DNA from: Macrostomum lignano | Lineage: Eukaryota | Direction: 5' to 3' | Length of the DNA stretch: 42,085 nt | NCBI GenBank assembly: GCA_002269645.1 | Contig: NIVC01000789.1 | Coordinates: 1 to 42,085, forward strand | In this document: positions 9,121 through 40,584 of the stretch, in pieces | How positions within the stretch are numbered: the stretch's first letter is position 1 | Layout of the letters: each line of letters begins with the position of its first letter | Notes under the pieces: generated by a model | Told to the model about the DNA's origin: nothing | What the model saw: the letters and a program-made list of their open reading frames with translations, nothing else | Databases searched by the model: none | Program-made: the position numbers and the translations under genes

Positions 9121-9430
9121 GGGGGCTGCAGTAGCCTTGTGGTTAGAGCGTCGGACTCACGACTGAAAGGTCGGGGGTTCGATTCTCGACCCATTCGGAA
9201 CAATTTGTGTCCTTGAGCAAGACACTTAACTCTGCATTGCTTCAGATCACCCAGCTGTAAAATGGGTGCCAGCATTGGCTGGGGTAATTGAGGGTGTGTG
9301 GCGATCCCCCAGTCCTTGGACTGAACAGCCGTACGCAGCCTTCAGATGCGCCGCCGCGCAATAGCTGCGGCTGAGCTGTGAGTTGCACATCTCTGGCCAT
9401 TTGGGCAGGTGTAATCAATTATTGTTATTA
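9121..9430 (+). mobile_element. tRNA-derived SINE with a CORE/V/Meta-type central domain (family B)
   Basis: A box TAGCCTTGTGG and B box GGTTCGATTCT, then TGTGTCCTTGAGCAAGACACTTAACTC...CCCAGCTGTAAAATGGGT, resembling the conserved CORE/V/Meta SINE core. No acceptor stem. Confidence 0.8.
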
Positions 9431-11125: not shown

Positions 11126-11485
11126 AGATTAACACAGCGAATGTATACTTTCACCTAATTTAAAGAATTACCAATCCATCTCTAAGGGAAGAGCACACCG
11201 AGTCCTAAGGATTCACACGCCGAATCTAGGGACTTCCAAGTCGAATATATATGCTTAATAATTTACTTAAACATCCAATCAATGGACTTCTACACTGAAT
11301 ATAGAGATTCTAAACTCAAATTTAAAGCTTAAAAATTTAAGATTCAGACTATAAAATCTTTGAAATCAAAAGCTAAGCCCCTATACTTGCGAAAATGTTG
11401 CAATCATTCAGAGATAGAAGCGGTGCGGATTAGAGTGAGCAAATAAAAAACGCACTACTAACAGTACTTTAGAAGCGGGTTATCT

Positions 11486-14400: not shown

Positions 14401-17400
14401 CTGAGTTCTCACTGTTTGAGCAGCAGTCCCTGAGTTCTCACTGTTTGAGCAGCAGTCCCTGAGTTCTCACTGTTTGAGCAGCAGTCCCTGAGTTCTTACT
14501 GTTTGAGCAGCAGTCCCTGAGTTCTCACTGTTTGAGCAGCAGTCTCTGAGTCTCACTGTTTGAGCAGCAGTCTCTGAGTCTCACTGTTTGAGCAGCAGTC
14601 TCTGAGTCTCACTGTTTGAGCAGCAGTCTCTGAGCTCTCACTGTTTGAGCAGCAGTCTCTGAGTTCTCACTGTTTGAGCAGCAGTCCCTGAGTTCTCACT
14701 GCTTGAGCAGCAGTCTCTGAGTTCTTACTGTTTGAGCAGCAGTCTCTGAGTTCTTACTGTTTGAGCAGCAGTCTCTGAGTTCTCACTGTTTGAGCAGCAG
14801 TCCCTGAGTTCTCACTGCTTGAGCAGCAGTCTCTGAGTTCTTACTGTTTGAGCAGCAGTCCCTGAGTTCTCACTGCTTGAGCAGCAGTCTCTGAGTTCTC
14901 ACTGTTTGAACAGATTCAGATAGAATGCTCACCTCGTTCATTCCTTGTACGTAGCCCTGTCCAGGGTTGAGTTTAGTATAGAGAAACAGCAGCCGCTCGC
15001 AGACCTCCCAGTGGGCCTCCTGGCCCTCCGGCAGCCGAAACATGTCCGAGTTGCGCCGCCTGGCGGGCCGGGCCAGCAGGGTGTTGACGCCGAACTGGCT
15101 GCGGCCGAACGTCTGCGCCTCAAGCAGCCCGGTCTCTACGCGGTGCCGCAGCGAGGCTTGCCGTCGTCTCGGCCAGCTGGTGAAAAAAAGATTTTCATAT
15201 CCTAATGCACCTATCAGATTTGAACTTGTCAGATTCTAAATAAACAGCTGGATTGTCAGCACCCGCCAATGCCTGACAAGATTTGAACTTGTCAAATTCT
15301 AAATAAACAGCTGTATTGTCAGCACCCGCCGTCAATGCCTGACAAGATTTGAACTTGTCAGAATCTAAATAAACAGCTGGATTGTCAGCACCCGCCAATG
15401 CCTGACAAGATTTAATTTTATCAGATTCTAAATAAACAGCTGGATTGTCAGCACCCGCCGTCAATACCTGACAAGACTTGAATCTTAACTAATTTGCCAC
15501 AGATTCGTTTTTTGCAGAATACAATTTTCTATTTTTGCATATTGGCCCATTTTTTTATTTGCGGTCGAAATTGTGTCTTGAGTCCTATTTTTAGGTGCAA
15601 TTTTTAAGTTGGGAATAGGTCCCTGGCATTAATTAGTTCAGAATACCTAGGCCAACAACCTACCGACTAGCCTGCTGAAAGAAGTTCAGATCGGGGCACA
15701 GCCGGCGGCAATCCTTGTCAATCTGCTGCAGAGTCTCGTTATCCTCGAAGTGCTTGGCCCACTGGCTGTTGGGATTCAAATTCAGCGGATGATCGCCGCC
15801 GGAGCCTTCAACACTGGCGCCCTGGCGTTCCTCATCCGGCTGCAGGATGACTTCTTCGACGTACTGATCGTAGAGGCTGCGCATTTTGGCCAGGTGAGCA
15901 GGCCACTCGGCCGGTCTGGGGTCCAGGTAGCCGAGCAGCAGGCGCCAGGTGACTGCCCGATGGCTGCCGCACTCGGGACAGCCGTTGAAGGCTTCGTCGC
16001 GAAGGCGATGCAAATCCAGCGGATTCTTGGAGAAGATGTTCTCAAATATGGCAGCTCTGTGGTTGGTGTAGAATGGAATTTAAAACAACTGATATTGATA
16101 TATTAAACTGATGAAGCACCTGACTGATACAAAGATTGTAGCAATTGCAAAATGAGATGTTTTACAAGCTCAAAATTTTACAAGTTTGAAACTTCATAAC
16201 AACTTTAAATAAGTTACAAAGCTAGTATAATTTTTGATGTTATATCTATACATGTATAGTCCAGATTGCTAGCTAGTTTAGGCCTAGGTAAATAGATGAT
16301 AGAAACAATGCTGCGGGCTGGCTTCTGCCCGAGCAGATTGAACTTTAATTTGTAATTGCCATAGACAAGTTTATTTGCCTGTACTGCGATTAGTTGGCGC
16401 AAGTGTCAAAGAGCCTTCGTGACAAAAAATAGAAATACATAAGTATTCAAGAAGACTCTGATAAGAGCAACGGCTGCAAGAGCCGAGAGTGCACGGCACA
16501 CAACTTGCGTAAATATAACGCAATACAAAAGACAGACTTGTAACAGTGGCGTCGCAAGCAGGATGAAGAGCGGTGTGAAACAACCGTCGGCTACTGACAA
16601 GTCTCCTGCTTCGCCGCTCAAACACGCCAAAATGGTGGTGATGGCGGATGCTGAAGCACAAAGTCAGCCAATAAAAGGCTCGGATGGACCAGCGCGTGCG
16701 GTAGCTGGAGCTATGGAAATCGAGCGCCTGGAGTTAGGAAACAACTACTCCCGGTGGCTGGACAGATTTACAATCGTCGCGAAGTTCTACAGATGGGACT
16801 CGACGGCGAAGGCTCAGATACTTCTGATGCGTCTCTCGACAGCATTGTACGACACGCTCGCAGATCAAGCTTCTCCGAAGAAACCAAGTGAGTTGTCTTA
16901 CTCGGAGATAGAAACAGCTCTGACAAGCATCCTGGTCCCAGCTACGTTTGTTCTGGCGGAAAGATACTCTTTCCAGCTGTGCTCTCGAAAGTCAGGGGAA
17001 AGCGTTCGCACATATGCGGAGCGAGTCCTCAAGGCTGCGGAGAAGTGCGAATTTATAAACAAGGACGAGCGTCTGAGAGACCAATTTATTTGCGGACTGG
17101 CTGACCAAAACGTCATCGGCAAGCTGCTGGTCAAGGACCATCTGAGGCTCAGCTTCAAGGAGGCAGTTGCTGAGGCTGAAGCACATTCAGCATTAGTCTC
17201 AACGGACATCATGAAGAGTGCCCCGAAATCTGAAAATTCTGGGATAATGAGCATTGGAATGTTAAAATCGTCATCAAAACCGCGGATCAAGGGAGTGAAT
17301 CGACAACAGTCACAGACTCAAAGCTCATCAAAATGCTCGCGCTGTGGAACAAGCCACGGAAAAGACGCGTGTCCAGCTTATGGAAAGACATGTCGTAAGT

Positions 17401-20400
17401 GTGGGAAGCAGAACCATTTTCAGAAAATGTGCCGCTCAAAGTTTGTTGTCCCGAACCAGAAAAACACAGCTGCAGTTCAGCACTTAGACGAGCACTCGCA
17501 GTCAGATCATGTCTTCATGGTTGGTGCAACTTCAAGGCAACCTTTGTCTACGGCTGCAGTCACAGTGACCCTTGACTTCATATCATCAAGTGATAAGGTA
17601 TCAATTCCGTGCCAGGTGGATACTGGGGCAGCAGTTTCAGTTATGTCTGACCGGGTCTGGAAGCAAATCGGCACCCCTGAACTGCAGCCTAGCAGCATCA
17701 CTTTGACAGGATATACCGACGCGCATCAATTCAAAATGTTGGGCCATTTCATCAGCAAAGTGAGTTACCAAGGAAAAGTGCACCGAATACCATTCAAAGT
17801 GGTTCGTTCTGATCGATCGTTTGCTCTACTCGGCAGGGACATTTTGACCATAGAAATAGATTTCAGCAAGGCTGATGGAAGCGAAGCGACTAGAGTATTC
17901 AGAGCGAGACTAGAATTGATTCCGGATGCTCAGCCAAAGTACATCAAGGCACGGTCGATCCCTTTTGCCTATAAAGATCGACTGAAAGATGAGATTGACA
18001 AGTTGCTAGCTGAGGGAATCATTGAGCCAGTGACTTTTTCTCAATGGGCCTCACCAATTGTCATCGTTCCTAAGGCTGATGGTAGGCTGAGACTCTGTGT
18101 GGACTACAAGCAAACATTGAATCCACAGCTCATGAAGGACAGTCATCCAACACCGACCCCGGAAGAAGCTTTCAGTACAGTAGCAGGATGCCGAATGTAC
18201 ACCATCTTGGACTTAAAAGCAGCGTACAACCAGGTGGAATTGGAGGAGGACTCAAAGCCTCTCACGGTCATGTCTACACCTTTCGGCAACTACCAGTACA
18301 ACCGTCTGGTGTTTGGGATACGGACTGCTCCAAGTATTTTCCAGCGCTACATCAGTCAGGTCATACAGGATGTTGATGGTGCAATTGCCTACATCGATGA
18401 CATTTTAATTGGTGGTGAGTCAGAGAAGCAGCTTAAGGATCGTGAGAGTCAAGTGCGAGAGCGTCTGGAACAACATGGCCTCAAGGTCAACGAAGAGAAA
18501 TGCCAGATTTGTCAGTCTCGGGTTCGCTTTCTCGGGTTTATCCTGGACAATGGCATGATCCTGCCCGACCCGGAGAAAGTGAGAGCCCTGCAAGAAATGG
18601 AGACTCCCAAGACGATGGCAGAACTAGAATCGCTCATCGGACTCGTCAGGTTCAGTGGCCGGTTTGTGCCCAATCTGTCGCACTACCTGGAGCCGTTGAC
18701 TCGATTAATGCGCGGCAGAAGAGAATTCCAATGGGATTCTGAGCAAGATGAAGCTTTTCAGCGTATCAAGTCCATGCTGACAGAAGATTCAGCTCTGGCT
18801 AATTACGACCCCAAGAAACCTGTGGCTCTGGAGTGTGATGCTTCCCAAAAAGGACTGGGCGGAGTTCTGATTCAAGGCAACACACCAGTTTTGTACATCA
18901 GCAAGAGGTTATCAGAAGCCGAGAAGAAGTATTCTCAGATCGAAAGGGAGGCCCTTGCAATTGTCTGGTCAACTCAGAGGTGTCAGCGGTTCTTAGCGGG
19001 ACGTCATTTCAAGCTGATCACGGATCACAGACCATTAACCTACATCTTTGGGCCGAACGAGGGCTTGCCTACGCGCGTATCAGCACGCCTTCAAAGATGG
19101 GCCATATCGCTAATGGCTTTTGACTACACCATCGAGTATCAACGGTCGCAGCTTATGAAATCAGACGCTCTGTCCCGGTTGCTTAACAACGAGACGGCTC
19201 GGACGTATACAATCGGGAGCATCCAACTACCCTCAACAATCATATCCATTCAAGAGGTTAGAGACCAATCACAGGATTGCCCAGAGATCGTTCTGTTAAA
19301 AAAAGCTATCCGGACGAGCAACTTTAGCGACCTGAGAATCCGCCCCTACAAGGCAGTCGCGGACGAACTGACGATCGAGTCGGACGTGGTACTCCGGGAG
19401 ATGCGAGTCATTCTTCCAAAGACGTTGCGGTTATCGGCAGTCCAAACGGCACACAGCACACATCTAGGCATTGACCAAACCAAGTCACTGTTAAGAGCAC
19501 AATTTTGGTGGCCCGGCTTGGATCGAGATGTAAAACAACTCATCGGAAATTGCAAGACGTGCAAAATGGTCAAGGCTAGCAATCGAAACTACCTAAAATC
19601 TTGGCCGACAGCAATGGACGCTGGAGAGCGCGTACATGCGGATTTTGCGGGTCCAATAGATGGCCAATATTTGTTGGTGCTGGTGGACGCCATGTCGAAC
19701 TACCCTGAGGTGCATCTGACCGCCAACATGGAGTCATCTACAGTCATCTCTAGGCTACGGAGAACTTTTTCGCAGTGGGGTGTGCCAAGGACACTTGTCA
19801 CCGACAACGGCCCAAGCTTCGTCTCAGCTGAAACAACACAGTGGCTGAAAGCAATCGGGTGCAGCCATGTGACCACACCTCCATATCACCCTCAGAGCAA
19901 CGGACTCGCAGAGAGATTTGTCCGCACAATGAAAGAATCTGTATCAGCGTTGGGTCTGAGTCAACACAACATTGACAAGTTCCTACTGTTCTACCGATCA
20001 TCCAAAGGAAACAATGGTCGCACACCGTCGGAGAAGTTTCTAGGTCGAAACATCCGGACTCCTTTGATGACAGAGTTTACTGGAGATGACAATGTGGTGT
20101 ACAGGACACAAGGAGCTACGTCACTAGCCAGAATCGTCCTGCCTACAGGCCGCAACACGGCAATCATCAAGCTTGAGAACGGCTTGTACAAGAAGGCTCA
20201 CAGAGACCAGATACAGAGCTTCAAGGGCAGCGATGACAAGGACGTTGGCCCGGAACAAGCTACCACTGGTGCTGCTGGTGAGGTCGATCACCCTCTAGCT
20301 ATGCGCCCTGGAGAAGAGGAGTGGGAGCAGCAGCAGCAGCAACCCAGAAGAAGTGAAAGACTGAGGAACAGACCGACTGTGAATTATAAGGAGTGAACTG

Positions 20401-22124
20401 TAATTTTGAAGCAGGGAGGTGCTGCGGGCTGGCTTCTGCCCGAGCAGATTGAACTTTAATTTGTAATTGCCATAGACAAGTTTATTTGCCTGTACTGCGA
20501 TTAGTTGGCGCAAGTGTCAAAGAGCCTTCGTGACAAAAAATAGAAATACATAAGTATTCAAGAAGACTCTGATAAGAGCAACGGCTGCAAGAGCCGAGAG
20601 TGCACGGCACACAACTTGCGTAAATATAACGCAATACAAAAGACAGACTTGTAACAAACAAAACTATTTAAATAATAGATTTATAGTTAATATTTGCTAT
20701 TAAAAATTTTATACTACACATTTAATATTGCTTCTTTAAAACTAATATTCTAGAAAACATTGTCTTGTTCAACTTTTAAAAGCTACCTAATATTAGCAAA
20801 AGTGTTTTGCTATAAATAGGGTCTTCAGTAGTGAGATTTTGAAAGTTTTTTTTGTATTTTTGATACATACAAAGAGTGTTTTAAAAGTAATGAGAATTTT
20901 GTTATAACTTTTGATTGGATGAACATATGAACCTGAAATTTTCACCCAACAATTTTACATATATGAACAATTAATAGCTTTATTTTAAGCCTTACATAGC
21001 TGCATGCAACTGTATAATTGTAAATGAAAAATCATGCCTCAAAATTTTAAATTATGATTTTTGTCTCATAATTTTTTTCTTGTAAAAGAAAAATACACTA
21101 TCGGTTGATTGGTGCCTTTTAAGTGCTATATTTGAATTTTTTTTTGGTCATATCTCTCTTAATATTTATCCTACAGTGTTTATATTCATGTTCATTTCAT
21201 AAAGGCGCATTAAAAAAATGCATTTAGAATTGCGCAAAATGCAATACAAAAAGTTATTCAACTTTTAAATTTTTACATGGGCCAAGTAAGAACAATAAAT
21301 TTTTTTCTTACAAAGCAGTTTTTTGGACTTTTAACTATCTAACTTTGCATTTCTATCATTAAAGTTTGTTTAAATGGCCCTTTTAGCATGAAAAATGAAT
21401 CCGTTTAAAGTAGTATTTCATAGCACCAATTTACATGTATACAAAAAATGTACAATGTTTAAATGATCACTTCTCTTAAAATATTTAGTTTTTTTGTTTA
21501 GGAGTTATTTCACTTGAAAGATATATTTCTCTAGTTTTGATACATATTATAGATTTTTATAAAACCAGTTCAACACATAGCAATTGAATTTTAAAGTTTT
21601 AAGATTTTTTGTTTTTTCTGCAACATTTTCAACTTTCAAAATCTCACTAAAGTCCCTACTAAAAATTCGAAATCAATAAAATAAGTCAATTTTAAGCTCT
21701 ATCTAGATGTCTAGATGACTTTTTAAACATTGTCTAGACATTTAGAAGTGACCTATTTAGCTTAGGTTCATAGCAAAACAGTATGTTTAGAAGTAATAGG
21801 CCTAGTTTAGAATATCATTAAAAATATAGAATTAAAGATTAGACAAGATCTAAATTTCAATTGTAAGATTTTAAATATTTAGGTTTTTAAATGCTAAAAA
21901 TCTAAAACTAAAGCTATATTGATTTGCACACATTTGTACAAGTCCTAAATGTTGACTGAATCTCAATCATCTTAACTCAGATATACCTATAACCTCGACC
22001 ACAAATTTTGAAAATCTGATAGTGATGTTGTCTGCTTAATAAATGCAATAATTATTTTCAAATCTGAAGAATTCAATAATAAATAAATAATTTCAATTCA
22101 AAGTTAAACTTACCTCATCTCCAT
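11486..22124 (-). CDS. TBC1D13: TBC1 domain family member 13 (Rab-GAP); complement join(22124..22114,16056..15664,15176..14933,13463..13026,11683..11486), ~427 aa
   Basis: Diagnostic motifs DHPLNLNPNSQW, QIDKDCRRLCPDLNFFQ, EAHWEVCERLLFLYTKLNPGQGYVQGMNE|VLGPIYYV, EFYAFRYLTLLLSQEF, VWDSLLADPQRF, NYPYADVRQIL. All junctions are GT-AG and phase-consistent. The 11-nt first exon (ATGGAGATGAG|gtaagt) is a lower-confidence inference. Confidence 0.93.
11733..12990. repeat. Minisatellite, 28-bp unit GCAACTGAGGATCTGGGAGGCTGGCCCA, filling TBC1D13 intron 4
   Basis: About 45 copies occupying about 94% of the 1342-bp intron. Confidence 0.95.
13517..14908. repeat. Minisatellite, 28-29-bp unit CTCACTGTTTGAGCAGCAGTCCCTGAGT(T), filling TBC1D13 intron 3
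   Basis: About 48 tandem copies read directly. Confidence 0.95.
15212..15483. repeat. 63-66-bp tandem repeat (about 4 copies) in TBC1D13 intron 2
   Basis: Unit GACAAGATTTGAACTTGTCAGATTCTAAATAAACAGCTGGATTGTCAGCACCCGCCAATGCCT with an internal TGACAAG/CTTGTCA inverted repeat. Confidence 0.9.
16309..16545 (+). repeat. 5' LTR (237 bp)
   Basis: TGCTGCGGGC...GACTTGTAACA; no difference from the 3' LTR seen by eye. Confidence 0.95.
16547..16563 (+). other. Primer-binding site TGGCGTCGCAAGCAGGA (probably tRNA-Ser type)
   Basis: 1 nt after the 5' LTR and starts with TGG. The TGGCG..G..AGCAGGA pattern resembles tRNA-Ser 3'-end complements; tRNA identity is inferred. Overlaps the gag ATG. Confidence 0.75.
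16563..20396 (+). CDS. Gag-Pol polyprotein, 1277 aa
   Basis: Two Cys/His knuckles (CSRCGTSHGKDAC; CRKCGKQNHFQKMC), protease VDTGAA, RT (LCVDYK, YIDD), RNase H (LECDAS, YSQIEREALA), integrase (H..STH..CKTC; HADFAGP, VTDNG, NGLAERFV). The PR-RT-RH-IN order indicates Ty3/Gypsy. Confidence 0.97.
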   Translation: MKSGVKQPSATDKSPASPLKHAKMVVMADAEAQSQPIKGSDGPARAVAGAMEIERLELGNNYSRWLDRFTIVAKFYRWDSTAKAQILLMRLSTALYDTLADQASPKKPSELSYSEIETALTSILVPATFVLAERYSFQLCSRKSGESVRTYAERVLKAAEKCEFINKDERLRDQFICGLADQNVIGKLLVKDHLRLSFKEAVAEAEAHSALVSTDIMKSAPKSENSGIMSIGMLKSSSKPRIKGVNRQQSQTQSSSKCSRCGTSHGKDACPAYGKTCRKCGKQNHFQKMCRSKFVVPNQKNTAAVQHLDEHSQSDHVFMVGATSRQPLSTAAVTVTLDFISSSDKVSIPCQVDTGAAVSVMSDRVWKQIGTPELQPSSITLTGYTDAHQFKMLGHFISKVSYQGKVHRIPFKVVRSDRSFALLGRDILTIEIDFSKADGSEATRVFRARLELIPDAQPKYIKARSIPFAYKDRLKDEIDKLLAEGIIEPVTFSQWASPIVIVPKADGRLRLCVDYKQTLNPQLMKDSHPTPTPEEAFSTVAGCRMYTILDLKAAYNQVELEEDSKPLTVMSTPFGNYQYNRLVFGIRTAPSIFQRYISQVIQDVDGAIAYIDDILIGGESEKQLKDRESQVRERLEQHGLKVNEEKCQICQSRVRFLGFILDNGMILPDPEKVRALQEMETPKTMAELESLIGLVRFSGRFVPNLSHYLEPLTRLMRGRREFQWDSEQDEAFQRIKSMLTEDSALANYDPKKPVALECDASQKGLGGVLIQGNTPVLYISKRLSEAEKKYSQIEREALAIVWSTQRCQRFLAGRHFKLITDHRPLTYIFGPNEGLPTRVSARLQRWAISLMAFDYTIEYQRSQLMKSDALSRLLNNETARTYTIGSIQLPSTIISIQEVRDQSQDCPEIVLLKKAIRTSNFSDLRIRPYKAVADELTIESDVVLREMRVILPKTLRLSAVQTAHSTHLGIDQTKSLLRAQFWWPGLDRDVKQLIGNCKTCKMVKASNRNYLKSWPTAMDAGERVHADFAGPIDGQYLLVLVDAMSNYPEVHLTANMESSTVISRLRRTFSQWGVPRTLVTDNGPSFVSAETTQWLKAIGCSHVTTPPYHPQSNGLAERFVRTMKESVSALGLSQHNIDKFLLFYRSSKGNNGRTPSEKFLGRNIRTPLMTEFTGDDNVVYRTQGATSLARIVLPTGRNTAIIKLENGLYKKAHRDQIQSFKGSDDKDVGPEQATTGAAGEVDHPLAMRPGEEEWEQQQQQPRRSERLRNRPTVNYKE
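20408..20419 (+). other. Polypurine tract GAAGCAGGGAGG
   Basis: Immediately precedes the 3' LTR. Confidence 0.8.
20420..20656 (+). repeat. 3' LTR (237 bp)
   Basis: Direct repeat of 16309-16545, followed by the TSD AACAA. Confidence 0.95.
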
Positions 22125-22451
22125 CGTATAAATTATTTTTATATTCTATTATTCAATTGCTTGACTAAATGGATAACTGTTTTTCAGTTTCAAAAGTGTT
22201 AAGAAAACAGTAATTATCGATAAAGGTGATAATTTATTTTTATTTTATTTGGTATGCTGTTGACTATACTCTTTGTATGAAGGTACTTTTCAATGTCGTT
22301 GTCGACTAACAGATAGTGCGATTACCAAATCACATGATTGACTACGTACCTACGTGTCTTCCTTTTCATTCTAGGAAAATAGTTAAGTTAAAATTCTATC
22401 CCGAACTCTGTCAGAATAACAATAAGGAATATTAGCAAGGATTTTTAAACA

Positions 22452-22937
22452 GAGCCGTAGCCTAATGGTCGAACGCAGCGTTCTTCGAAGCGACCTAGGC
22501 TCGATTTCAAGTGAAGCGTAGTGATTTAGGGTTAAATTGTAAACTCGACTAGGTCTGCTCGTGCAATTAGCTCCAAGGGCCAACGGCTGGGAGTGGGCGA
22601 TCGTATTGGTTCAGTCACTTCCGAGTATGGAGTACCAAGAAGTCCAATGGGGTGACCTAGTACCGAGTACTATATTACGAGTCCACCGTGTCCATGCACC
22701 GGCACAGTACGAAGCTTACATTGGGTAACGATTAATGAAGTTAGGGCCGCTGTAAACTCCTGTGTGAGTCTGGTTATGCGTTTGACTGCGTATAACGAGA
22801 GTGGTCCTTGTTGTGTGTCGACCTGCTTAGGAGAGTCGGCGGATTGGCACGATCATCGGCCCCTACCGGTTTTGACAATGTTGCGTAAGTGAGCCAGGAT
22901 CGGCACACAGCCCCTTGCTCTGATTAAAAATAAAATA
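22452..22937 (+). mobile_element. ~490-bp tRNA-headed SINE (family C) between TBC1D13 and TRAX
   Basis: A box TAGCCTAATGG, B-box-like GGCTCGATTTC, CpG-rich body standing out from AT-rich flanks, A-rich tail TTAAAAATAAAATA. Confidence 0.65.
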
Positions 22938-23594
22938 GATTTTCGAATACTACATATATTGCAGCACTACTACTACACTGTATATGATTTTAGATTTAAT
23001 TACGCTAGCTGCTACAAGCAGGAGTTTGCGGTGTTTTGGATTACAGGTATACTACATGTATGCAGTATTAAAGTAAATTAAATTAAAAGGATTATGACGA
23101 CATGAACAGCAAACGTACTGAAACTACATGCATCTCATAAATTTACTAGGCTGTAACTGAAAATGGCTGAAGTACATGTAATACTCTACGCAAAACAAAG
23201 CGAGCAATCAAGTTCTGGAATCATAATAAAGTGTGTTTTTTATTTTTACAATCTTAAAAATATGCATTCTCCCTAAAACTCTAAAACTACCCTTTGTTAA
23301 ACTTGCATGCGGACATGATACCTGTATCTCAGCAATACAAGAATTACTTGGTTATCGATCTGCATGACCAACACGTACATGGAAAATTTATGCATAATAA
23401 AAAACAGCAAATACCAAACTATCAATAAACATGTATGTTCAGCACAAGTTGAGATGTTTGAAAAGCTAGTTATCAAACAGTTTATCAAATTATTTGTATT
23501 TCTTAAGACCGAAATAGACAGCACCAATAATTATAGCAACTTATACAACAGGAAATGTAGACGAAACGCATAAAAATTAGTAAGCAATGTCAAA

Positions 23595-25727
23595 TCAATG
23601 GGTTACAACTGGCAGTTGTAAGTTTGACTCCTCAATGCAACGCAGGCACTGCTGATAGCACACTGTCTCAACTTTTTCCACGCTTTGCCGCATTGTCTCC
23701 AGCTTGCCAGAGAAGTCTTTCGGAAACTAATCCGGACCGCGGTCTGGCACTGTTTCGCAGCAGCCAAGCAGCTTCTGCAACGTTAACAGCAGGATGAATT
23801 TGTCTTTGGTGGGAGAAACAATTGGGACATGTAAAACTAGAGAAATTAGCAATTAGAGCAATTAGAGAAAACAATTGTCACGTGACTATGTCCAGCCAAT
23901 GGTGACTTAAATGTGCACGCATCCATACAGGGTTTTTGTAGTATAGCAATGCACGAATCACACACATACTTGATATCCGTAGCGTCAAGGCACCGGCTTA
24001 GCTTTGAGCTATTCGCCGTTTACCTTCGGCGACATCGTCCCAACAACCAGTGCTGAGGCAAATCTGCCTATTTCGCTGAGCACATACAAGAGCACCAATG
24101 CTGTACGCAGGCACGTACTCATACACACGCTCACAGGGTTTTCAGTGGCCCTGACTTTCTAATCGGTCAGGCATGTACACTCTCGGTGCCTTGTGGGTTG
24201 GCCCTCATGGCATGGGTGTGAATCGCATGACAACCCCTGGGTCAATGTTGTGCAAAAAACCGTTGAGCAACCCGCTCTGCCCCAATGAATCAATGAGAAC
24301 GGCCACCAACCTATAGAAACGCCAGCACGCGCTCCGGCGTATCGAAATCAGCCTTGGCAGCGGCATTGAGCGCCAGGCGCATCAACTCGCCGCTGAGGTC
24401 GCACACGCCAAGCAGGTAGTCGAACTGGGACACCAGCAGTCCGGACGGCAGGCGGTCGCGTACCCCGCCGGACAGGCTTAGCAGGCGGCCGGTGGACAGG
24501 AATTCTAAGAAAGTCATAGCCTCGATCAGCTCCTGCAGTCCTGGACTATAAGCCCGCCTGTATTCCCAGGGATCCTGGCCGGTCAGCTCAGAGCTGATTG
24601 GCAGCAGCTTAGACGCAATCAGCTTGTCCAATCGCTGGCTAACTTCAGTCAGTACAGCCAATCTTTCTTCATCGGAGGCGCCAGCCACTCGATGCAGAGT
24701 GAAAATAAGCCGCTTACTCTCCATGGTTATGTCGCGAGACAGTTTCACAATGCGCTCCCGCCTGTCCTGCTTGACGTCGAGGCGCTCTTTGAATGTCTAA
24801 TTGGTGTATTAGAACAGTTAATTTTACGAGGTAAGTATTCAATACGTTTATTAACTTTTTATCAGCGTATTTTTCGTAGATCGCTACTATTAGTAGAGTA
24901 ACAGCACAAAAAGCAAATTATAGTTAGTTTTATACAGGTAATAATTGGTTATTTTTACTGCAAGTAAAATGTCAAAGAAATGCAACATATTGTAGTTGTT
25001 TTTATAAATTTTATATTATCAATCTGACAGTTTTCTTCTATACAATACTCATATTTCATGATGCTCCAGACTTGCATATTGAACAGGCTTGCATCATCAA
25101 GACTGAGTAAATGGTCAATAATTAGCAGCCCTGAGCTGCGGTACAAGTGCAGGATGGGAGTTGCGACCCTTACAATGTCAGGACTGTACAAGCTATATGC
25201 ATATCTCGGATGCACCATGCCACTGACTGCAACACCTGGGCCATGTTGAAATGGGTCAGGGTGTAATTTCTTTGCTAGTTCTATAGTACAGCCTTTGATT
25301 TTATTGGAATTAGTACATTTAAAATTATCAAAATCGACAGACTTTGCAGAAATTTTGCTGTACTTTGCCAAAAAAATTTGCCATGTTATAAGGTAGCATC
25401 ATAATTCTTATCCCTAATCTTTTGAGCCCTTCCCAGTTATCAGGCTCCTAGATAGCCAGATGATTGGGTAGATGAAAACTGGATTAACTAATTAGCCACC
25501 AAAAAGTTTGTCACTAGGGCTTAACAAAGAATGATAACTAAGACAGGAAAACAGTAGCCCAGGTTGCTCTAATTTAAATTTAATTCAGCACAGTTGTATA
25601 CCTGAAATAGTGCTGCCACTTTGTTATTCTCATCCTGACTTAACCTGGCACATTTATTGTCACTGGCTGGTCCAGGTGGTGTGGCATTTGGACGCTTTGA
25701 AGCTGCAGTTTCTGGTTGTTGAGGGTC
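23595..25727 (-). pseudogene. TSNAX: Translin-associated factor X (TRAX); complement join(25727..25602,24796..24311,23774..23595) with two in-frame TAG codons; start exon not fixed
   Basis: Motifs ERIVKLSRDITMESKRLIFTLHR, GLQELIEAM and VCDLSGELMR retain the four catalytic acidic residues typical of TRAX rather than translin. C-terminus KLETMRQSVEKVETVCY. Junctions are phase 0 GT-AG. TAG at 24313-24311 and 23729-23727. Identity is strong; pseudogene status is inferred. Confidence 0.75.
24005..24195 (-). mobile_element. SINE family A body fragment in the last TRAX intron
   Basis: Minus strand GATTAGAAAGTC...CCCTGTGAGCGTGTG...TTGGTGCTCTTGTATGTGCTCAG...TGGGACGATGTCGCCGAAGG aligns with 36695-36824. 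Confidence 0.75.
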
Positions 25728-27269
25728 CTGAAACAAATGAAACAATACTTGATATAATTCTCTATCTAGGCTTAACAAGTATTTATATAAATTTATACTC
25801 TTACAATACTTTGTATAATAATTGTAATAGTTAGCCATCACTCAGTTTCTTCTATGATCCATTGGGATTTGTTCTTTGTCCTAGCTTTAGTGCCTTAGTA
25901 TCTTAGATTAAAGCTTGGAATTAACTATTAATTTAAAGCTATAGTCTCAACTGATTTTAACAAAGACCTCAACCTAGTATTAAGCTTTTAGCTTCTTATA
26001 ATTTAAAGATATTAGGCCCTATTAACTTATTAATTTTAGCATTACCCAACTAAAGTTAGGTAAAAAGGTTTCTTAAAATGACTTAAGTTTCTTAGGTAAA
26101 TAGGACTAAAACCCTATTGCAGCCAATGGCTATTATTGTAGTGTCTACTGCAGATTGGCCTTTAGCAATATAGGCATAGTCTGGCATGCCAATGCAATTG
26201 GTATAAGAAATGATTTAGACCTTGGCTGCAATAGAAGACTAAAAGTTAAGAAGTAAAAATGCTATAGTAGCATGTAGAGAATAAGAGAATATGCAAAATA
26301 TCACCAATAGCTACTAATAGAAGAATGTTGCAAGACATTATTATTGGACTTATCAAAATACTGATAATTTGCAACAGCATTTGAGAGCTTTAGATAGTTT
26401 AAACTCATTATGAAAAAAAATGATATTGGGATAAATATTGAATAGTCCATAATAGGATAACTATTTATAAAGTATTTATTTGTTACCTTGTAAATTGGTT
26501 TTTTTGGCCCCTTAAAAATGTCATTGGCAACTGGATTTTCGGCATCAGAGGCCAATCTGGCTACTTTATTTTTCCCATGCTAGTTGCCAATTTCAAAAAA
26601 TTATTTGATATGAATCAATATAATGGAATTGTTAGCAGCATAGATCTTAGAGTTGAGAGAACAAATTTCTGCTTTTTAAACATAGAATTGGAAATATCTA
26701 GGGCCTATCCTCGAGAATTTGGCTAGTTACCAATGAGCAACTGAAAATAGCCATTGGCAACTGGATTTTGAGCCCCAAGGGCCAGTTGGCAACTGGATTT
26801 CCAACCTTAAAAACCTAGCTTGTAAATAACACTAGCAATATTTACATACTACCATGCAAATAATAGCTATCAAAGTGCAATGATTTGATACAAAGGACCA
26901 TGGCTTTTGATAGAAAAAATGTTGTACTAAAATAAATTTGAAATTCCACATTTTCAAGAATGAATAAACATGATTTAAAGAGCATAATTGGATCAAGCAC
27001 AGGATAAATAATGGATAAAACAAGCGTAATTAAGGGGAAAGTTAATATGTAGGCCCTGTATTTAGCAAGTTTGCTTCCTTCTTGACAATGCTCGGCCGCA
27101 TGTTAGGCCTATATTGACTAGGCTAATACCATTTTGTATTATAGGAATTAATAAAATTACACACCTGTTCTTTTTCATTTCTTAATTGTCTAGATCTGGA
27201 TTCATTAGGATTCCAAGTAAATATGTTTAATTGCCACAATAATTCACTTGGAAGTTGGAATTGATATGA

Positions 27270-27920
27270 TTGGTGGATGACGAAATGACTCTCTTCAGGT
27301 AGTGCACGCTAATTAAAATGACGAACCGACCCTAGTCGAGGTGAGCACCCCAGACACCCGAGATGACGAAATGATTAGTAACCAATTTAATATCTGACAC
27401 GAAAAAATATCCTTAATACATTACTCATATTGCTTAAATATACTCCAAAAAGAGACAGTGAAGACCATCCGTAAGCGGACAACCACCAACTACCTGGTTG
27501 CTGTTGTATTAAGTGACGAAGGAATAATGATCAATCAAATATAAATCAGTTATAAATATGTCGTGTAGATTTCAAAGCCGTAGACAAATTTTAATTTACG
27601 GGTGACTTAAAATAAAATAATTTTTATAAAATTAAATTTTTATTGCTTTACTGTCTTTAGGCCAGAAAATCAATCTTGTACATTTAAAAATTTTGAAAAA
27701 AAGTTGTTAGCAATATTAAGAAAGCGTGCGTGTTGAGCTTTGCTAATAATTTTTTATTTAAATTCATTTTATTGAAAATTGTGCGCGCAAGGCCCTTGCT
27801 CAGTGTGTGTTGACCATAACGTATTAACATAACAAGTTACATTAATGCGATAAATATAGGATTAGACCCATACTATAGTGTGTTAGCTTATCGAGAAAGA
27901 GTCAGTAATTCGTCACGGAA
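27270..27920. promoter_or_regulatory. CpG-retaining island, candidate bidirectional TRAX/DHX15 promoter
   Basis: Many CpGs inside an otherwise CpG-poor domain, five TGACGAA motifs, and a position between divergent genes. Confidence 0.35.
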
Positions 27921-28404
27921 GAGAAAATTTTTTTTCGTATTTGTTTGTTTGTTGGAACATTAAAGTTTTAAGCTAATTGCACTGATTAATCTGTGTTAAG
28001 AAGGCCTAGCCAATTAGCTTGACCAAGACCTGCAACAATATTTTGAACTTAGCAACGTTTTGAGTATATATACTAAACTGCATCAACAAAATTACAACAT
28101 GTCTATGCGACACAGACTTGATATTGGTAAAAGCTCAATGTCATCCAGGTATGTTATATTGCTTTCACATTTGGGGGCCAGGAAGTAAATTTATTTTGTC
28201 TAGCATAAACCTGAATTTAAAGTAAAGAAGATCACTTTTTCTAGTATATTTATATAAAAAAATTGAGAGTATGAAGCAGCCATAGTTTTGGATCTTGTAT
28301 TAGTGTATGTTGGGTTTAATGCTAAAAAAATGATAAGACCTTGTTTGTATGCCCAGTTTGTATGCCAATACAAAAAATTATCATAATTTGACACAATGTA
28401 TCTG

Positions 28405-29010
28405 CCATAGTCCGGATCATGCTGGGTGCACGCCCAAACAAAAATTAAATAATTACAGATGCACGCCAGAAAAAAATGTAGTGCACACCCATTTTCAAAA
28501 ATATGCCAGTGTTGCAACAATAAATGACGTTTTTTATGTTGTGACAATAAAATAATTTTTTCAAATTGCATAATAGACACTTAATACCAGATAATTTGGT
28601 TGCTTTTTATGCTTTTTTGGCAGTACTTTTAATAGCAGAAAAATTTTACATGCAAAGAATCAAAGATTTATTTAATTTTAAATGCCCTTTTACAAGCTTA
28701 AAATTTGTGCTTAAAAATTGTTTTCATCTTTTTTCTACTTCACAATAACTCTTACGCGTGATTCTATAAAGTGCATGCCAGGTGTGCATATATACTATCT
28801 TCTCAAGAGTGATGCACGCGATCTGTGCATGCCTAGTTTTGGCATGCAAGGCCAATGCACGCCCAAATTTTTGGGCATATACTCAAATGATGCACGCGAG
28901 TGAAGTGATGCACTCAAGTGATGCACGCGATCTGTGCATGCCTAGTTTTGGCATGCAAGGCCAATGCATGCCCAAATTTTTGGGCATATACTACATGATC
29001 CGGAGTGTGG
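28405..29010. mobile_element. Non-autonomous DNA transposon with 17-bp TIR and 8-bp TSD
   Basis: TIR CCATAGTCCGGATCATG versus reverse-complement CCACACTCCGGATCATG; flanks TGTATCTG / TATATCTG. Internal ~80-bp tandem duplication (about 28803-28882 and 28913-28992) with palindromes. Confidence 0.7.
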
Positions 29011-29159
29011 TATATCTGCTATGTCATCTATGCTAATTGCTAGGATATACTCTGTAAGGCTGAAAAATGGTAAGACCCTTATTGTACACTAGGATCCTGG
29101 CATATATGTTGCCTTCAAACTATGGTAGAACAGTTAAGACTTACGTAAAAATATATCTT

Positions 29160-29320
29160 CTCTACCTATAAAAATCAAAACTCTGTCTGTCTGTCTGTCT
29201 GTGGACAAATTACTTTGCTATGGACTCCCAAACCGCTCAACCAAATTATACCAAATTTTGCACCCACCCTAAACTCACTACGGAGAATGTCTTAGGCTAC
29301 CTTTAAATTTCCTAAATTTG
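29160..29320 (+). mobile_element. 5' end of a possible Helitron/DINE-like non-autonomous element
   Basis: CTATAAAAATCAAAACT(CTGT)n...AAACCGCTCAACCAAATT...AAATTTTG resembles that class of repeat. The 3' end is uncertain (perhaps near 31126). Confidence 0.35.
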
Positions 29321-29575
29321 AGTCTTCCTACCTAAAAGTGCAAAAAACAGCTTAAAATTTGTGATTTTTACTAAATCCTCCATAGTGCTACTCCACTTCT
29401 ATTGATCCTCTTCAAATTTAACATAATTAATCTTAATCTTCATTTTGACACAATCATGTAAAATTTTGAGTCTCAAAGTTAATCCTGTTCATCATGTTGT
29501 GCGAGGCAGCCACCCCAACCTCCACCCGCCTGCCTCTCTTTCCTGATCTAGGCAAAGGGTGTAAATAGGTTTTAA

Positions 29576-30359
29576 AATAGGGGTCAGACGTGATCACGAT
29601 CGTGATCACGATTTTGTGAATTCACAACCATTTTTTTCACGATCGTGATTTTCTTGAAACCCATTCACGACAGTCGTGAATTTCTGCTTTATTATATTTT
29701 TATTAGAAGTATAACTTTTCTACTTGGTTTACCAAAATATGTGAATACAAATGTGTAAAAGAGTAATAAATTTTAAATTTGTTGACTTGACAGCATTACT
29801 GAGTAGCTATTATCAATTTATAAATATTTCTTTTCTTATTTTGTTATTTTCAACACTTGTAACTTACGAGCTCAAATTACAGGGTCTCCCTAAAACATGC
29901 CCTGCGCCGCCCCGAACTGCTACACATTATAACAAATTTGGCTATAACTGAAGACATTTCAAAGTTAGTTAGTTCTCTGTTAAGCTTCAAGTTTGTATCG
30001 AATTTAGTTTTTTTTACTATGAAATATACAATTTGGTGAATAATAAGCGATATAAATAGTAATATTAGTAAAATAATAATACTATAATTTTATAATAGAA
30101 ATGAGAAAATGAAAAATAATGCTATTATTTAGAATGATAATTAAAGTTATTTATTCCATTACTCTTACAACAAATACTTTTCTCTGCAATCAAATACTGC
30201 ATTGACAAAAAATGTTATAATGTGTAGTGGTGCAGGGCAGTGTGGGGCATGTTTTAGGGAGACCCCAAAATACGTGTATGCAAATATAAATTCACAATCA
30301 TGCCCGACTTTAAAAAATTTCACGCCCAACCAAAATTTTCTGCTTATCTGACCTCTATT
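29576..30359. mobile_element. MITE with TTAA TSD and AATAG(G/A)GGTCAGA TIR (Kolobok-like ends)
   Basis: TTAA|AATAGGGGTCAGA ... TCTGACCTCTATT|TTAA; RR/YY termini with TTAA flanks. Confidence 0.6.
29882..30265. mobile_element. Nested MITE with ~53-bp TIRs GGGTCTCCCTAAAACATGCC...ACACATTATAACA
   Basis: Inverted arms at 29882-29934 and 30213-30265; no clear TSD. Confidence 0.75.
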
Positions 30360-31159
30360 TTAAAATGACTATTTTTTGGCTGCCATAAGTTTGCTCCACA
30401 TGAAGCAATTGACTTCAAATTTGACACAATTCTTTATTGACTCATTCTCTGTCTTAATGTAAAGTCTCAATTCTGTATCTCAATCAGGACAGAAACTGTA
30501 AGCATGTGAAGTTTGTCTGCTTTTTCTGTTTTTTTGTGCTGCTCACTCACTCATTCTCCCAGCCCAGAAAAAGGGTAAGGCAATAGGGCCAGGCTCAATG
30601 TACATAGCAAATGTACAGTGTTTTGGAATAACTTTTTAATAGCCTTCTTTCCCTGCACCCTGCGCATGTAGATGAGAGGCTACATTTAGCCATAACAGTT
30701 TAGCCGCTTAGCAAGAGATTCAAACCACTGTCCTCTGTATACACAAGTCTGCAGCAGTTTAACAGTGGATGGCAAATCAAGGCAATGCGGGGGTGTGGGA
30801 TAAAAATAGCGAAAAATTAATGAATAACTGATTATTGATTACAATGCAACTAAATTAGTTACACCATCAAAATTTTAACTAAGTTTCGCATAAGGTTTAA
30901 AACTTTAAAATTTAATGGCTCCTAAGAAATGCGTATTTCCTTGGTTGTGTTGGACTGCTGCAAAGTGCAGACTGTGATGGTGGTGGTGGTGGTGGTCTGG
31001 TAGAGATACACAAATTCCCCTTAGGACTGCTAATTGGCCAGAAAGGTGACGTGATTAAAGCATGAGAAATGATAACCATGAGAGTACTACATCCCACAAA
31101 CTGGCTTTCGAAGCAGGGATCAGTAGATTTTTACCTCAAAGGCCAGATAAAGAATCCAG

Positions 31160-32630
<1,471 letters not shown>

Positions 32631-33112
32631 AGGGCAGAGGCCAGAGTTTGCTTGACATTCTGCGCAGCACCCCAGCCAACAATATCAATGCTTGCTTCAA
32701 ATCCTAATTTTACACAAGTGTACTCTATTTTATGTTTAACTCTATCCTAACTATTAACAAGTTTTTGTTTGAGTTTGACCTCAGATTTTAAAATACATGC
32801 AAAAATGGTTCCAGGGATTGGAGTTTCCCAGGTTCAAAATCCGCGGGTTTCAACAGCTTGTAACTATACTAAAAATAATTATCAATTTGCATTTAAAAAC
32901 AATAATAAATGCTTTGTATATTTTAAATTAAATGGTTAGAATCTAAAGTTTTATAATTAATCCTAAATGGAGTTTATTTTATATAAAACCTTAACTTTGA
33001 TAAAAATATTATTACCTAAATCTTTATTATAGCCAAGATATATTGTTACTGGGTATTTTTCTGCAAAAATCAAAATAGTGAATAATATCTATGTTAATTT
33101 TCTGCCATAAGG

Positions 33113-33625
33113 AGGGTCCATATACCGTAGCCGTAGCCATAGTTTTAACTAAAAGTCTAGAAAACAAAATATTTTGAATCAAGAAGATAACCTAGTGCTT
33201 AAACAACTGCAAATTAAGTTAGAAAATAAAAGTAACAATTGCCTTTGTAGATTATATTTCATCTTTTTTCAGAGCAATAATACATAATCGTTACTGAAAG
33301 TACTAATTCTGAACTTTTTCACATTAATAAAAATTAGAGTTTGCTAGTGTTTTATTGTACTTTTTTAGGTATATTTTAAAAGTTGATAATACAGTTTACT
33401 AAAAGTATATTTGTTTTACTCTACTTGTTTCTAATATTTTTTCAATTTTTTAACATTAATAACTACGGCTATGGGAATTTATGGAATGTGACAACAACTA
33501 CCATATTTCCATAGTCGTAGCCATAAAAGCAGCTAGCTACTGTAGGCATATCCATAGCTGCCATAGGCACCTATTTTACCGTATTTGCTATAGGATCCCG
33601 TAGCTGTAGCTATGGCTACAGTGGA
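33113..33625. mobile_element. Decayed DNA-transposon relic with CCGTAG/CCATAG subterminal motifs in both orientations
   Basis: TACCGTAGCCGTAGCCATAG at ~33122 and GTAGCTGTAGCTATGGCTACAGTGG at ~33600; family not identified. Confidence 0.4.

Positions 33626-35089: not shown

Positions 35090-40584
<5,495 letters not shown>

What the first reader, a model, noticed from the sequence alone, without database searches (positions are those of the whole stretch)
23595..24313. TRAX carries two in-frame amber codons, both where CAG is the simplest ancestor
Seen: exon 3 ends TTT CTA TAG|gttggt, and exon 4 reads AAG CTG CTT GGC...CCG GAT TAG TTT CCG AAA GAC...KLETMRQSVEKVETVCY...TGA. The frame is otherwise open and homologous to the TRAX C-terminus, and all four catalytic acidic residues are intact. 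CAG|GT is the consensus exon end, so both stops are CpA->TpA candidates; TTT CTA TAG could derive from TTC CTG CAG. Inference: a recently inactivated copy hit by the regional mutational process. Alternatives are readthrough, an allele, or an assembly error. Truncation would remove ~60 C-terminal residues of the C3PO nuclease subunit.
Basis: partly seen in the sequence, partly recalled or inferred. Interest (0 to 1): 0.7.

Follow-up and report, generated by a model that had tools for sequence, protein, structure and literature searches.

The report
Broken spare copy of flatworm TRAX
One of at least four nearly identical copies of the TRAX nuclease gene in the recently genome-duplicated flatworm Macrostomum lignano carries two recent stop-codon mutations; two other copies are intact, so this is an ordinary decaying duplicate or null allele.

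Summary

The window is the whole contig NIVC01000789.1 of the Macrostomum lignano DV1 assembly Mlig_3_7. GenBank already annotates this TRAX copy (Mlig001638g3) as a 200-aa protein that ends at the first TAG.

Three other contigs of the same assembly carry copies that are 96-99% identical, introns included. All three read CAG at the first site and TGG, or a 2-bp-deleted TGG, at the second. So the changes are Gln CAG>TAG and Trp TGG>TAG.

- Copies g5 and g2 encode identical intact 263-aa proteins and differ only at four synonymous sites.
- The window's own substitutions have a mixed spectrum, with no C>T hypermutation.
- The neighbouring TBC and DHX15 genes have no in-frame stops.
- A private LTR-retrotransposon insertion and the clustering of private variants suggest that this is a real haplotype and not assembly noise.

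Either stop removes helix 7 of the seven-helix fold. Verdict: a recent null copy in a neopolyploid genome, of low interest. Whether it is an allele or a paralogue, and whether reads confirm both sites, remains open.

The parts
25602..25727 (-). TRAX coding exon 1 (DPQQPETAASK...VAALFQ). It is preceded by the acceptor tgtttcag|, which fits the M. lignano trans-splice motif [T/C]TNCAG. The start ATG is probably supplied by the spliced leader.
   Evidence: Sequence. The leader ends in ATG and the acceptor motif is given in PMC8629364. The annotated paralogue protein P0122 starts exactly at DPQQ. That the leader supplies the start codon is an inference.
24311..24796 (-). TRAX coding exon 2 (TFKERL...ERVLAFL plus the first TAG). 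It encodes helices 1-5 and most of helix 6, and all four catalytic acidic residues.
   Evidence: Catalytic codons at 24532-24530, 24523-24521, 24400-24398 and 24388-24386.
24311..24313 (-). First premature stop, TAG. The ancestral codon is CAG (Gln, codon 204 of the genomic CDS). It is the last codon of exon 2, followed by the donor gttggt.
   Evidence: Window T against C in copies g1, g5 and g2. Homologues have R, Q or K at this column.
23775..24310 (-). Intron 2 (gttggt...ttgcag), 536 nt, retained and 96-99% identical in all four copies.
23595..23774 (-). TRAX coding exon 3 (KLLGCC...VVTH plus TGA). It encodes the end of helix 6, the loop between helices 6 and 7, and helix 7.
   Evidence: Pfam profile positions 179-204. 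AlphaFold2 model of the intact paralogue.
23727..23729 (-). Second premature stop, TAG. The ancestral codon is TGG (Trp, codon 220). It lies in the loop between helices 6 and 7.
   Evidence: Window A against G in g5 and g2. Copy g1 has TG plus a 2-bp deletion at the same place.
23595..23597 (-). Normal TGA stop codon, shared by all copies.
16309..20656 (+). Haplotype-specific LTR retrotransposon in the first intron of the neighbouring TBC gene. It is not part of TRAX but marks this contig as a distinct haplotype.
   Evidence: 237-bp LTRs that are 100% identical. TG..CA ends and a 5-bp target duplication AACAA, with empty sites in the g5 and g2 contigs. RT, RNase H and integrase domains on its product.

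Best explanation
The window is one of at least four assembled, near-identical copies of the TSNAX (TRAX) locus in Macrostomum lignano line DV1. These copies may be haplotypes or subgenome paralogues. M. lignano is a neopolyploid whose assembly is known to keep redundant copies apart.

After this copy split from its closest relatives (0.5% divergence or less), it acquired two transition mutations in the coding sequence. One is C>T, turning Gln CAG into TAG in the last codon of coding exon 2. The other is G>A, turning Trp TGG into TAG in the last exon.

Translation should stop at the first TAG. The product would have 203 genome-encoded residues. It keeps the four catalytic carboxylates but lacks the end of helix 6 and all of helix 7, so it most likely cannot fold or assemble with translin into C3PO.

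The first stop sits at the last exon junction and the second in the last exon. By the rule known from mammals, the mRNA would therefore escape junction-dependent decay.

Function is covered by intact copies (g5, g2), so the lesions are tolerated. This is ordinary early decay of a redundant duplicate, or a null allele.

Shown: the sequence states, their polarity, and the intact copies. Inferred: that both variants are real in the animals, that the product is non-functional, and the prediction about mRNA decay.
For: - Identity of the window: the protein search returns M. lignano BOX15_Mlig001638g2 at 98% identity. Cluster members g1, g2, g3 and g5 come from GCA_002269645.1. Copy g3 is 200 aa on a contig of exactly 42,085 bp, confirmed as NIVC01000789.1, with its CDS ending at 24311.
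- Similarity of the copies: they are 95.9-98.9% identical across exons and introns.
- Polarity of the changes: site 24313 is T in the window and C in the other three copies; site 23728 is A in the window and G in the others.
- Constraint on the intact copies: the g5 and g2 proteins are identical and intact. Their CDSs differ at only four sites, all synonymous, against about 1.8% overall divergence, so those copies are under constraint.
- Rate in this copy: window-private substitutions run at about 0.25% in both coding (2 of about 785 sites) and non-coding DNA (4 of about 1620 sites). This fits a lack of constraint on this copy.
- Real haplotype: private substitutions cluster at 20.8-28.4 kb and are absent from 28.4-35.7 kb. 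A private LTR insertion has a target-site duplication, and the site is empty in the paralogues.
- Independent hint: UniRef A0A1I8JMP5, from the older ML2 annotation, has Gln at the first site and ends exactly at ...DRGPD. That implies a stop at the same Trp codon.
- Structure: the AlphaFold2 model of the intact paralogue (pLDDT 88) has seven helices, H190-207 and H219-250 being helices 6 and 7. In that protein's numbering the stops fall at residues 200 and 216. The lost segment holds six invariant columns.
- Literature: DV1 carries three subgenomes about 2% apart, the assembly is redundant, and the consensus was polished with Pilon.
Against: - No reads could be mapped, so neither TAG is confirmed at read level.
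- The literature says most 4-copy blocks of this assembly have only 3-fold read coverage, so one of the four contigs may be a redundant or chimeric representation.
- Site patterns among g1, g3 and g5 are mutually incongruent over short distances (patterns 0110 and 1100). That means either recombination or gene conversion, or chimeric consensus.
- Both window-private coding changes are nonsense, although only 3.6% of possible substitutions are (2.5% of transitions). For one gene chosen in advance that is improbable, about 1e-3. It is expected somewhere in a genome-wide scan that selects for stops.
- The ML2-derived protein has Gln at site 1, so the first TAG has no independent support.
Confidence: 0.8

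Rival explanations
1. Assembly or polishing artefact: one or both TAGs are consensus errors in a short, possibly redundant haplotig, and the animals carry CAG and TGG.
For: - The assembly is Canu on early PacBio reads, polished with Pilon using multi-mapping Illumina and RNA-seq reads.
- 93% of read pairs map to several loci, 36% of assembly length lies in chimeric scaffolds, and 4-copy blocks mostly have 3-fold coverage.
- Sister contigs show probable indel errors: -2 and +2 in the g1 TRAX copy and a frame break in the g5 TBC gene.
- The ML2-derived protein has Gln at site 1.
Against: - PacBio consensus errors are mainly indels, whereas these are substitutions (general knowledge).
- Polishing with reads from paralogues would pull a site towards the majority state (CAG or TGG), not away from it (inference).
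- The window's private substitutions are clustered, not scattered, and sit next to a private LTR insertion, as expected of a real haplotype.
- A stop at the same Trp codon is implied by an independent annotation of the older ML2 assembly.
Confidence: 0.13
2. Rescue by alternative splicing: transcripts use the upstream donor CGC|GTGCTG and the new acceptor ggattag|TTT, which the mutation itself creates. This skips both TAGs in frame.
For: Both sites are in phase 0, so joining ...DFDTPER to FPKDF... would keep the frame (my reading). The G>A change creates an AG that the paralogues lack.
Against: - The donor GTGCTG departs from the GT[G/A]AG consensus of the species.
- The new AG has no polypyrimidine tract and lies 47 nt downstream of a strong acceptor, ctgttaacgttgcag|.
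- The product would lack 22 residues, including half of helix 6, so it would not be a full-length protein.
- There are no transcript data.
Confidence: 0.03
3. Functional recoding: TAG is read through or decoded as an amino acid in this organism or in this mRNA.
For: The frame downstream of both TAGs is open and homologous to TRAX.
Against: - The open frame is explained by recency. This copy is at most 0.5% diverged from intact copies, so less than one further change is expected in 180 nt.
- The paralogues use CAG and TGG, two different amino acids, at the two sites.
- No in-frame TAG is seen in the DHX15 or TBC exons of the window.
- After splicing the contexts are UAG-A and UAG-U, neither a known readthrough context (general knowledge).
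- No nuclear code change is known in animals (general knowledge).
Confidence: 0.02

Closest known systems
Human and Drosophila TRAX (TSNAX), the catalytic subunit of the C3PO translin-TRAX RNase (PDB 3PJA, 3QB5, 3AXJ)
   Same: The Translin-family domain covers the whole profile. The best PDB hits are TRAX chains (E=2.7e-41 and 5e-35), well ahead of translin (about 1e-7). The E, E, D, E catalytic residues are conserved. The intact paralogue is predicted to have seven helices, as described for TRAX in PMC6144819.
   Different: - The window copy is interrupted by two stops and would lack helix 7.
- M. lignano TRAX is short. It has no long insert between helices 4 and 5, has a 4-residue insertion in the loop between helices 6 and 7, and reads LRCIEE where nearly all homologues read VRGSE.
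Non-processed (duplicated) pseudogenes or null alleles arising after whole-genome duplication (fractionation)
   Same: The introns and flanking synteny (DHX15 - TRAX - TBC) are retained. Intact sister copies exist. There are few, recent disabling substitutions, and the coding rate equals the non-coding rate.
   Different: It is very young. There are no frameshifts and no loss of splice signals, and expression is unknown. It may still be a segregating allele and not a fixed paralogue. The M. lignano subgenome study that I term-searched has no hits for 'gene loss', 'pseudogene' or 'stop codon'.
Sister copy Mlig001638g1 (NIVC01001477.1)
   Same: It shares two amino-acid changes with the window copy (A226S, I256L) and is also disabled in the last exon, at the very same Trp codon.
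   Different: It is disabled by a 2-bp deletion plus a 2-bp insertion 100 nt downstream, not by substitutions. Indels of this kind may be PacBio consensus errors.

Membership tests
TRAX (translin-associated protein X), Translin family PF01997 | Significant full-length match to the Translin-family profile | tested here: met
   E=1e-49, 169.7 bits against a cut-off of 25.9, profile positions 1-204 of 205, with X placed at the two stops.
TRAX (translin-associated protein X), Translin family PF01997 | Closer to TRAX than to translin | tested here: met
   PDB TRAX chains score E=2.7e-41, 5e-35 and 8.6e-34; translin chains score E of about 5e-8 or weaker. The database relatives that carry a functional name are called translin-associated protein X.
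TRAX (translin-associated protein X), Translin family PF01997 | Catalytic acidic residues equivalent to human E126, E129, D193 and E197 | tested here: met
   They align and their codons are located. Drosophila E123, E126 and D204 are named as active residues in PMC6144819. The human residue numbers come from my own knowledge of the C3PO structure papers.
TRAX (translin-associated protein X), Translin family PF01997 | Complete seven-helix bundle encoded by an uninterrupted reading frame | tested here: not met
   The window copy stops within helix 6 (first TAG) and again in the loop between helices 6 and 7 (second TAG). Helix 7 is not translated. The intact paralogues g5 and g2 meet this feature.
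TRAX (translin-associated protein X), Translin family PF01997 | Forms an RNase-active heteromer with translin | not testable with these tools
   This needs co-expression and an activity assay.
Non-processed duplicated pseudogene or null allele | Disabling mutation relative to intact, closely related copies in the same genome | tested here: met
   Q204* and W220* are private to the window. Copies g5 and g2 are intact.
Non-processed duplicated pseudogene or null allele | Introns and flanking gene order retained (not a retrocopy) | tested here: met
   Both introns align at 96-99% identity. DHX15 and TBC flank TRAX in the window and, between them, in the sister contigs.
Non-processed duplicated pseudogene or null allele | Relaxed constraint in the disabled copy | tested here: inconclusive
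   The coding and non-coding private rates are both about 0.25%, and there are two shared non-synonymous changes and no synonymous ones on the g1/g3 lineage. The counts are tiny: 2 and 4 sites.
Non-processed duplicated pseudogene or null allele | The variants are real in the organism and occupy a separate locus (paralogue rather than allele) | not testable with these tools
   This needs read mapping, k-mer assignment to subgenomes, or a chromosome-level assembly.
Stop-codon reassignment or programmed readthrough | The same stop codon at conserved sense positions across copies and across other genes | tested here: not met
   The paralogues have CAG and TGG. No in-frame stops occur in the DHX15 or TBC exons of the window.

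The most novel reading that the evidence does not exclude
The TRAX copies may be silenced non-randomly. The window copy has two nonsense hits and no other private coding change. Copy g1 has a frameshift at the very same Trp codon. Older ML2 gene models end at that same codon. Together these could reflect selection for reduced dosage of the C3PO catalytic subunit after polyploidisation, or a local mutational hotspot at GAT-TGG-TTT. A further possibility is a stable, decay-escaping truncated TRAX with a regulatory or dominant-negative role.
Probability: 0.05. Interest if true: 0.4.

Novelty: new member of a known kind. Interest (0 to 1): 0.1.

Why it matters
It matters little beyond bookkeeping.

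- It shows that this in-frame TAG pair in a raw M. lignano contig is a lesion in one copy and not recoding.
- It corrects the inferred ancestry of the second stop: Trp, not Gln.
- It gives a concrete, phaseable example of early loss of a redundant gene copy in a neopolyploid animal. That may interest people who study fractionation in M. lignano or plan knock-outs there, since the number of functional TSNAX copies to be hit is lower than the number of assembled copies.
- It also explains why these proteins are flagged 'partial' in GenBank: the start codon probably comes from the spliced leader.

Tried and rejected
- **Genetic-code variant (TAG = Gln), my first thought.** Rejected once the organism proved to be an animal, the paralogues showed CAG and TGG (two different amino acids), and the neighbouring genes showed no in-frame TAG.
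- **Regional C>T hypermutation.** Rejected by the mixed spectrum of the 21 window-private substitutions.
- **General degeneration of the whole haplotype.** Rejected. The TBC exons are intact and the 427-aa product equals that of the g2 contig. The DHX15 product carries all its helicase domains.
- **Looking up the DNA behind UniRef A0A1I8JMP5 (ML2 assembly), to see whether its stop is TAG or TGA and what it has at site 1.** The protein is not on record in the contig collection.
- **Literature search for TRAX or translin in Macrostomum.** No paper found. Hits for 'premature stop' with M. lignano were unrelated, for example a mitochondrial COI frameshift in M. hystrix.
- **A first whole-window BLAST** was swamped by 28-bp-period minisatellites and had to be repeated with culling.
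- **Not done:** I did not search for a fifth copy (g4), which did not appear in the protein cluster. I did not run fold search, because the sequence-level match to TRAX structures was already decisive.

Full report
**What is in the sequence**

The gene lies on the minus strand. Reading it directly gives ...GAG CGC GTG CTG GCG TTT CTA TAG followed by gttggt. The TAG is at 24313-24311.

After a good acceptor (ctgttaacgttgcag|) at 23775, the sequence continues AAG CTG CTT GGC TGC TGC GAA ACA GTG CCA GAC CGC GGT CCG GAT TAG TTT CCG AAA GAC ... CCA GTT GTA ACC CAT TGA. This TAG is at 23729-23727 and the TGA at 23597-23595.

The joined translation, with X at the stops, matches Pfam Translin PF01997 over essentially the whole profile (E=1e-49). 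It is far closer to solved TRAX chains (human 3PJA_J, E=2.7e-41; Drosophila 3AXJ_B, E=5e-35) than to translin (about 1e-7).

In that alignment the residues opposite human E126, E129, D193 and E197 are E, E, D and E. All four lie in the exon upstream of the first TAG (codon coordinates).

**Where the window comes from**

The protein search returned Macrostomum lignano proteins as the only near-identical hits. The cluster look-up listed four GenBank proteins of one gene family name: BOX15_Mlig001638 g1, g2, g3 and g5. Copy g3 is 200 aa and sits on a contig of exactly 42,085 bp.

One search confirms that the window is NIVC01000789.1 of assembly GCA_002269645.1 (Mlig_3_7). It also confirms that the deposited CDS of g3 ends at 24311, the first TAG. 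The truncation is therefore already implicit in the public annotation.

**Gene model**

The annotated paralogue proteins begin at DPQQPETAASK with no Met and are flagged partial. In the window this exon is preceded by tgtttcag|. That fits the [T/C]TNCAG trans-splice acceptor motif of the species, and the 35-nt spliced leader ends in ATG (PMC8629364).

I infer that the leader supplies the start codon. The coding exons are then 25727-25602, 24796-24311 and 23774-23595.

**Ancestry of the two stops**

The other three copies were fetched with their flanks:
- L001 = g2 on NIVC01000152.1
- L002 = g1 on NIVC01001477.1
- L003 = g5 on NIVC01000910.1

They align to the window through exons and introns at 95.9-98.9% identity.

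At 24313 the window has T and all three others have C, so the paralogues read TTT CTA CAG|gt. At 23728 the window has A, while g5 and g2 have G (GAT TGG TTT). Copy g1 reads GAT TG-- TT, a 2-bp deletion.

Hence:
- The second stop is Trp TGG>TAG, not CAG>TAG.
- The proposed extra changes (TTC CTG > TTT CTA) did not happen.

Both changes are C>T at a CpA if each is read on the strand where the C lies. That is a description, not evidence of a process.

**State of the other copies**

Copies g5 and g2 encode identical 263-aa proteins. Their CDSs differ at four sites, all synonymous, while the loci as a whole differ by about 1.8%. This is the signature of purifying selection on those two copies.

The window and g1 share two conservative replacements, A226S and I256L. 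Apart from these, the window's only private coding changes are the two nonsense mutations.

Copy g1 carries a -2 and a +2 indel 100 nt apart in the last exon, which puts about 35 codons out of frame. Indels of this kind may be long-read consensus errors.

UniRef A0A1I8JMP5, from the annotation of the older ML2 assembly, reads ...FLQKLLGCCETVPDRGPD and ends there. That implies Gln at site 1 and a stop at the same Trp codon. Its DNA could not be retrieved, so this is only suggestive.

**Is there a regional mutational process?**

I aligned 15 kb (window 20749-35716) with the g1 and g5 contigs. The window has 21 private substitutions, against 2 and 5 for the others.

Their spectrum is mixed: G>A 4, T>A 4, T>C 4, A>G 3, G>C 2, C>A 2, G>T 1, A>T 1. 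They are confined to 20.8-28.4 kb, and the three copies are almost identical from 28.4 to 35.7 kb.

Neighbouring genes are not hit:
- The TBC-domain exons are free of stops, and the annotated product (427 aa) equals that of the g2 contig.
- The DHX15-like helicase exons are long open frames, and its product carries all its domains.

So there is no hypermutation signature and no regional decay.

**Is the haplotype real or an assembly artefact?**

Arguments for caution come from the literature. Mlig_3_7 is a Canu assembly of early PacBio reads, polished with Pilon using Illumina and RNA-seq reads (PMC5730564). The DV1 genome has three subgenomes about 2% apart. 93% of read pairs map to several loci, 36% of assembly length is in chimeric scaffolds, and most 4-copy blocks have only 3-fold coverage (PMC10733133). 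The site patterns among g1, g3 and g5 are also mutually incongruent.

Arguments for reality:
- The lesions are substitutions, not indels.
- Mis-polishing with paralogous reads would homogenise towards CAG and TGG (inference).
- The private variants are clustered and not scattered.
- The contig carries a private, very young LTR retrotransposon at 16309-20656. Its 237-bp LTRs are 100% identical, it has TG..CA ends and a 5-bp target duplication AACAA, and the g5 and g2 contigs have clean empty sites.

I put about 0.8 on the stops being real and about 0.13 on an artefact at one or both sites, more likely the first.

**Consequence for the protein**

An AlphaFold2 model of the intact paralogue (P0001, 33-sequence alignment, mean pLDDT 88, pTM 0.81) has seven helices. 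Helices 6 and 7 are H190-207 and H219-250, which matches the seven-helix description of TRAX in PMC6144819.

In that numbering the first stop replaces residue 200, inside helix 6. The second replaces residue 216, in the lower-confidence loop between helices 6 and 7.

Either stop removes helix 7, which holds six of the 29 invariant columns of the family alignment (K224, K234, E236, C239, R245, E248).

TRAX needs translin to fold (PMC6144819). A bundle missing its last helix is unlikely to assemble, but this is an inference.

The first stop is the last codon before the final exon junction and the second is in the final exon. Under the mammalian 50-55-nt rule (established knowledge, untested in flatworms), the mRNA would not be a target of junction-dependent decay.

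**Rival readings**

*Readthrough or recoding.* The open downstream frame is explained by youth: 0.5% divergence or less gives less than one expected change in 180 nt. The two sites encode different amino acids in the sister copies.

It would use two poor sites next to a strong acceptor and delete 22 residues of helix 6 and the following loop.

*Chance.* Only 3.6% of possible single substitutions in this CDS (2.5% of transitions) create stops. Two out of two private changes being nonsense would be surprising (about 1e-3) for a gene chosen in advance. This finding was selected because of its stops, in a genome with tens of thousands of redundant gene copies, so I give it little weight.

The coincidence of lesions at the same Trp codon in g3, g1 and the ML2 models is recorded as the basis of the 'novel case', with low probability.

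**Verdict**

This is a real TRAX gene copy, correctly read by the first stage. It is most likely a recent null copy, either an allele or a subgenome paralogue, in a neopolyploid flatworm. The first stop came from CAG and the second from TGG.

It is ordinary biology and already implicit in the GenBank annotation. Whether it is an allele or a paralogue, and read-level confirmation of both sites, remain open.

Noticed in passing
window 16309-20656 (+): A young LTR retrotransposon, about 4.35 kb. Its 237-bp LTRs are 100% identical, it has TG..CA termini and a 5-bp target duplication AACAA, and it carries one long gag-pol-like ORF with RT, RNase H and integrase domains. It sits in the first intron of the TBC gene on the opposite strand. 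The insertion site is empty in the g5 and g2 contigs. The g1 contig ends only about 90 bp from the insertion point.
   Followed up: partly
L002 about 11,986 and about 100 nt downstream (g1 copy, NIVC01001477.1): The g1 TRAX copy has a 2-bp deletion in the same GAT-TGG-TTT codon pair that holds the window's second TAG. A 2-bp insertion about 100 nt downstream restores the frame for the last codons. This is either an independent lesion at the same spot or a long-read homopolymer error.
   Followed up: partly
L003 15415-18 (g5 contig, NIVC01000910.1): The contig with an intact TRAX has a frame break in the first large coding exon of the neighbouring TBC gene: the tblastn match splits into two frames, and the annotated product is 366 aa against 427 aa elsewhere. 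Lesions or errors are therefore spread over different genes in different copies.
   Followed up: no
window 25727-25735 (-): The TRAX coding sequence starts directly at a trans-splice-type acceptor (tgtttcag|GACCCT) with no genomic ATG. The M. lignano spliced leader ends in ATG, which probably supplies the start codon and explains the 'partial' flag on all four GenBank proteins.
   Followed up: partly
window about 3200-6700, 11700-14900, 8576-9163, 10650-11130, 37500-38900: There are very large minisatellite arrays. One family with a 28-bp period gives hundreds of offset BLAST matches and recurs inside TBC introns and near the homeobox gene. The arrays translate as long pseudo-ORFs (such as [23 protein letters not shown]) that could mislead ORF-based scans.
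   Followed up: no
window 30000-34000 and 36700-37100: A strongly strand-skewed low-complexity tract at 30000-34000 (GC skew +0.3 to +0.4, AT skew +0.23 to +0.27; its minus strand is CT-rich). A long trinucleotide-type repeat lies inside a DHX15 intron at 36700-37100.
   Followed up: no
window 7335-7928 (+): An exon encoding a paired-like homeodomain (…[12 protein letters not shown]…) followed by a Gln/His-rich tail. It was not examined further.
   Followed up: no
window 23640-23655 (-); alignment A1 columns about 355-360: M. lignano TRAX reads LRCIEE where nearly all homologues have VRGSE (G and S are at least 90% conserved). It also has a 4-residue insertion, including the mutated Trp, in the loop between helices 6 and 7. 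These features are lineage-specific and present in the intact copies too.
   Followed up: no
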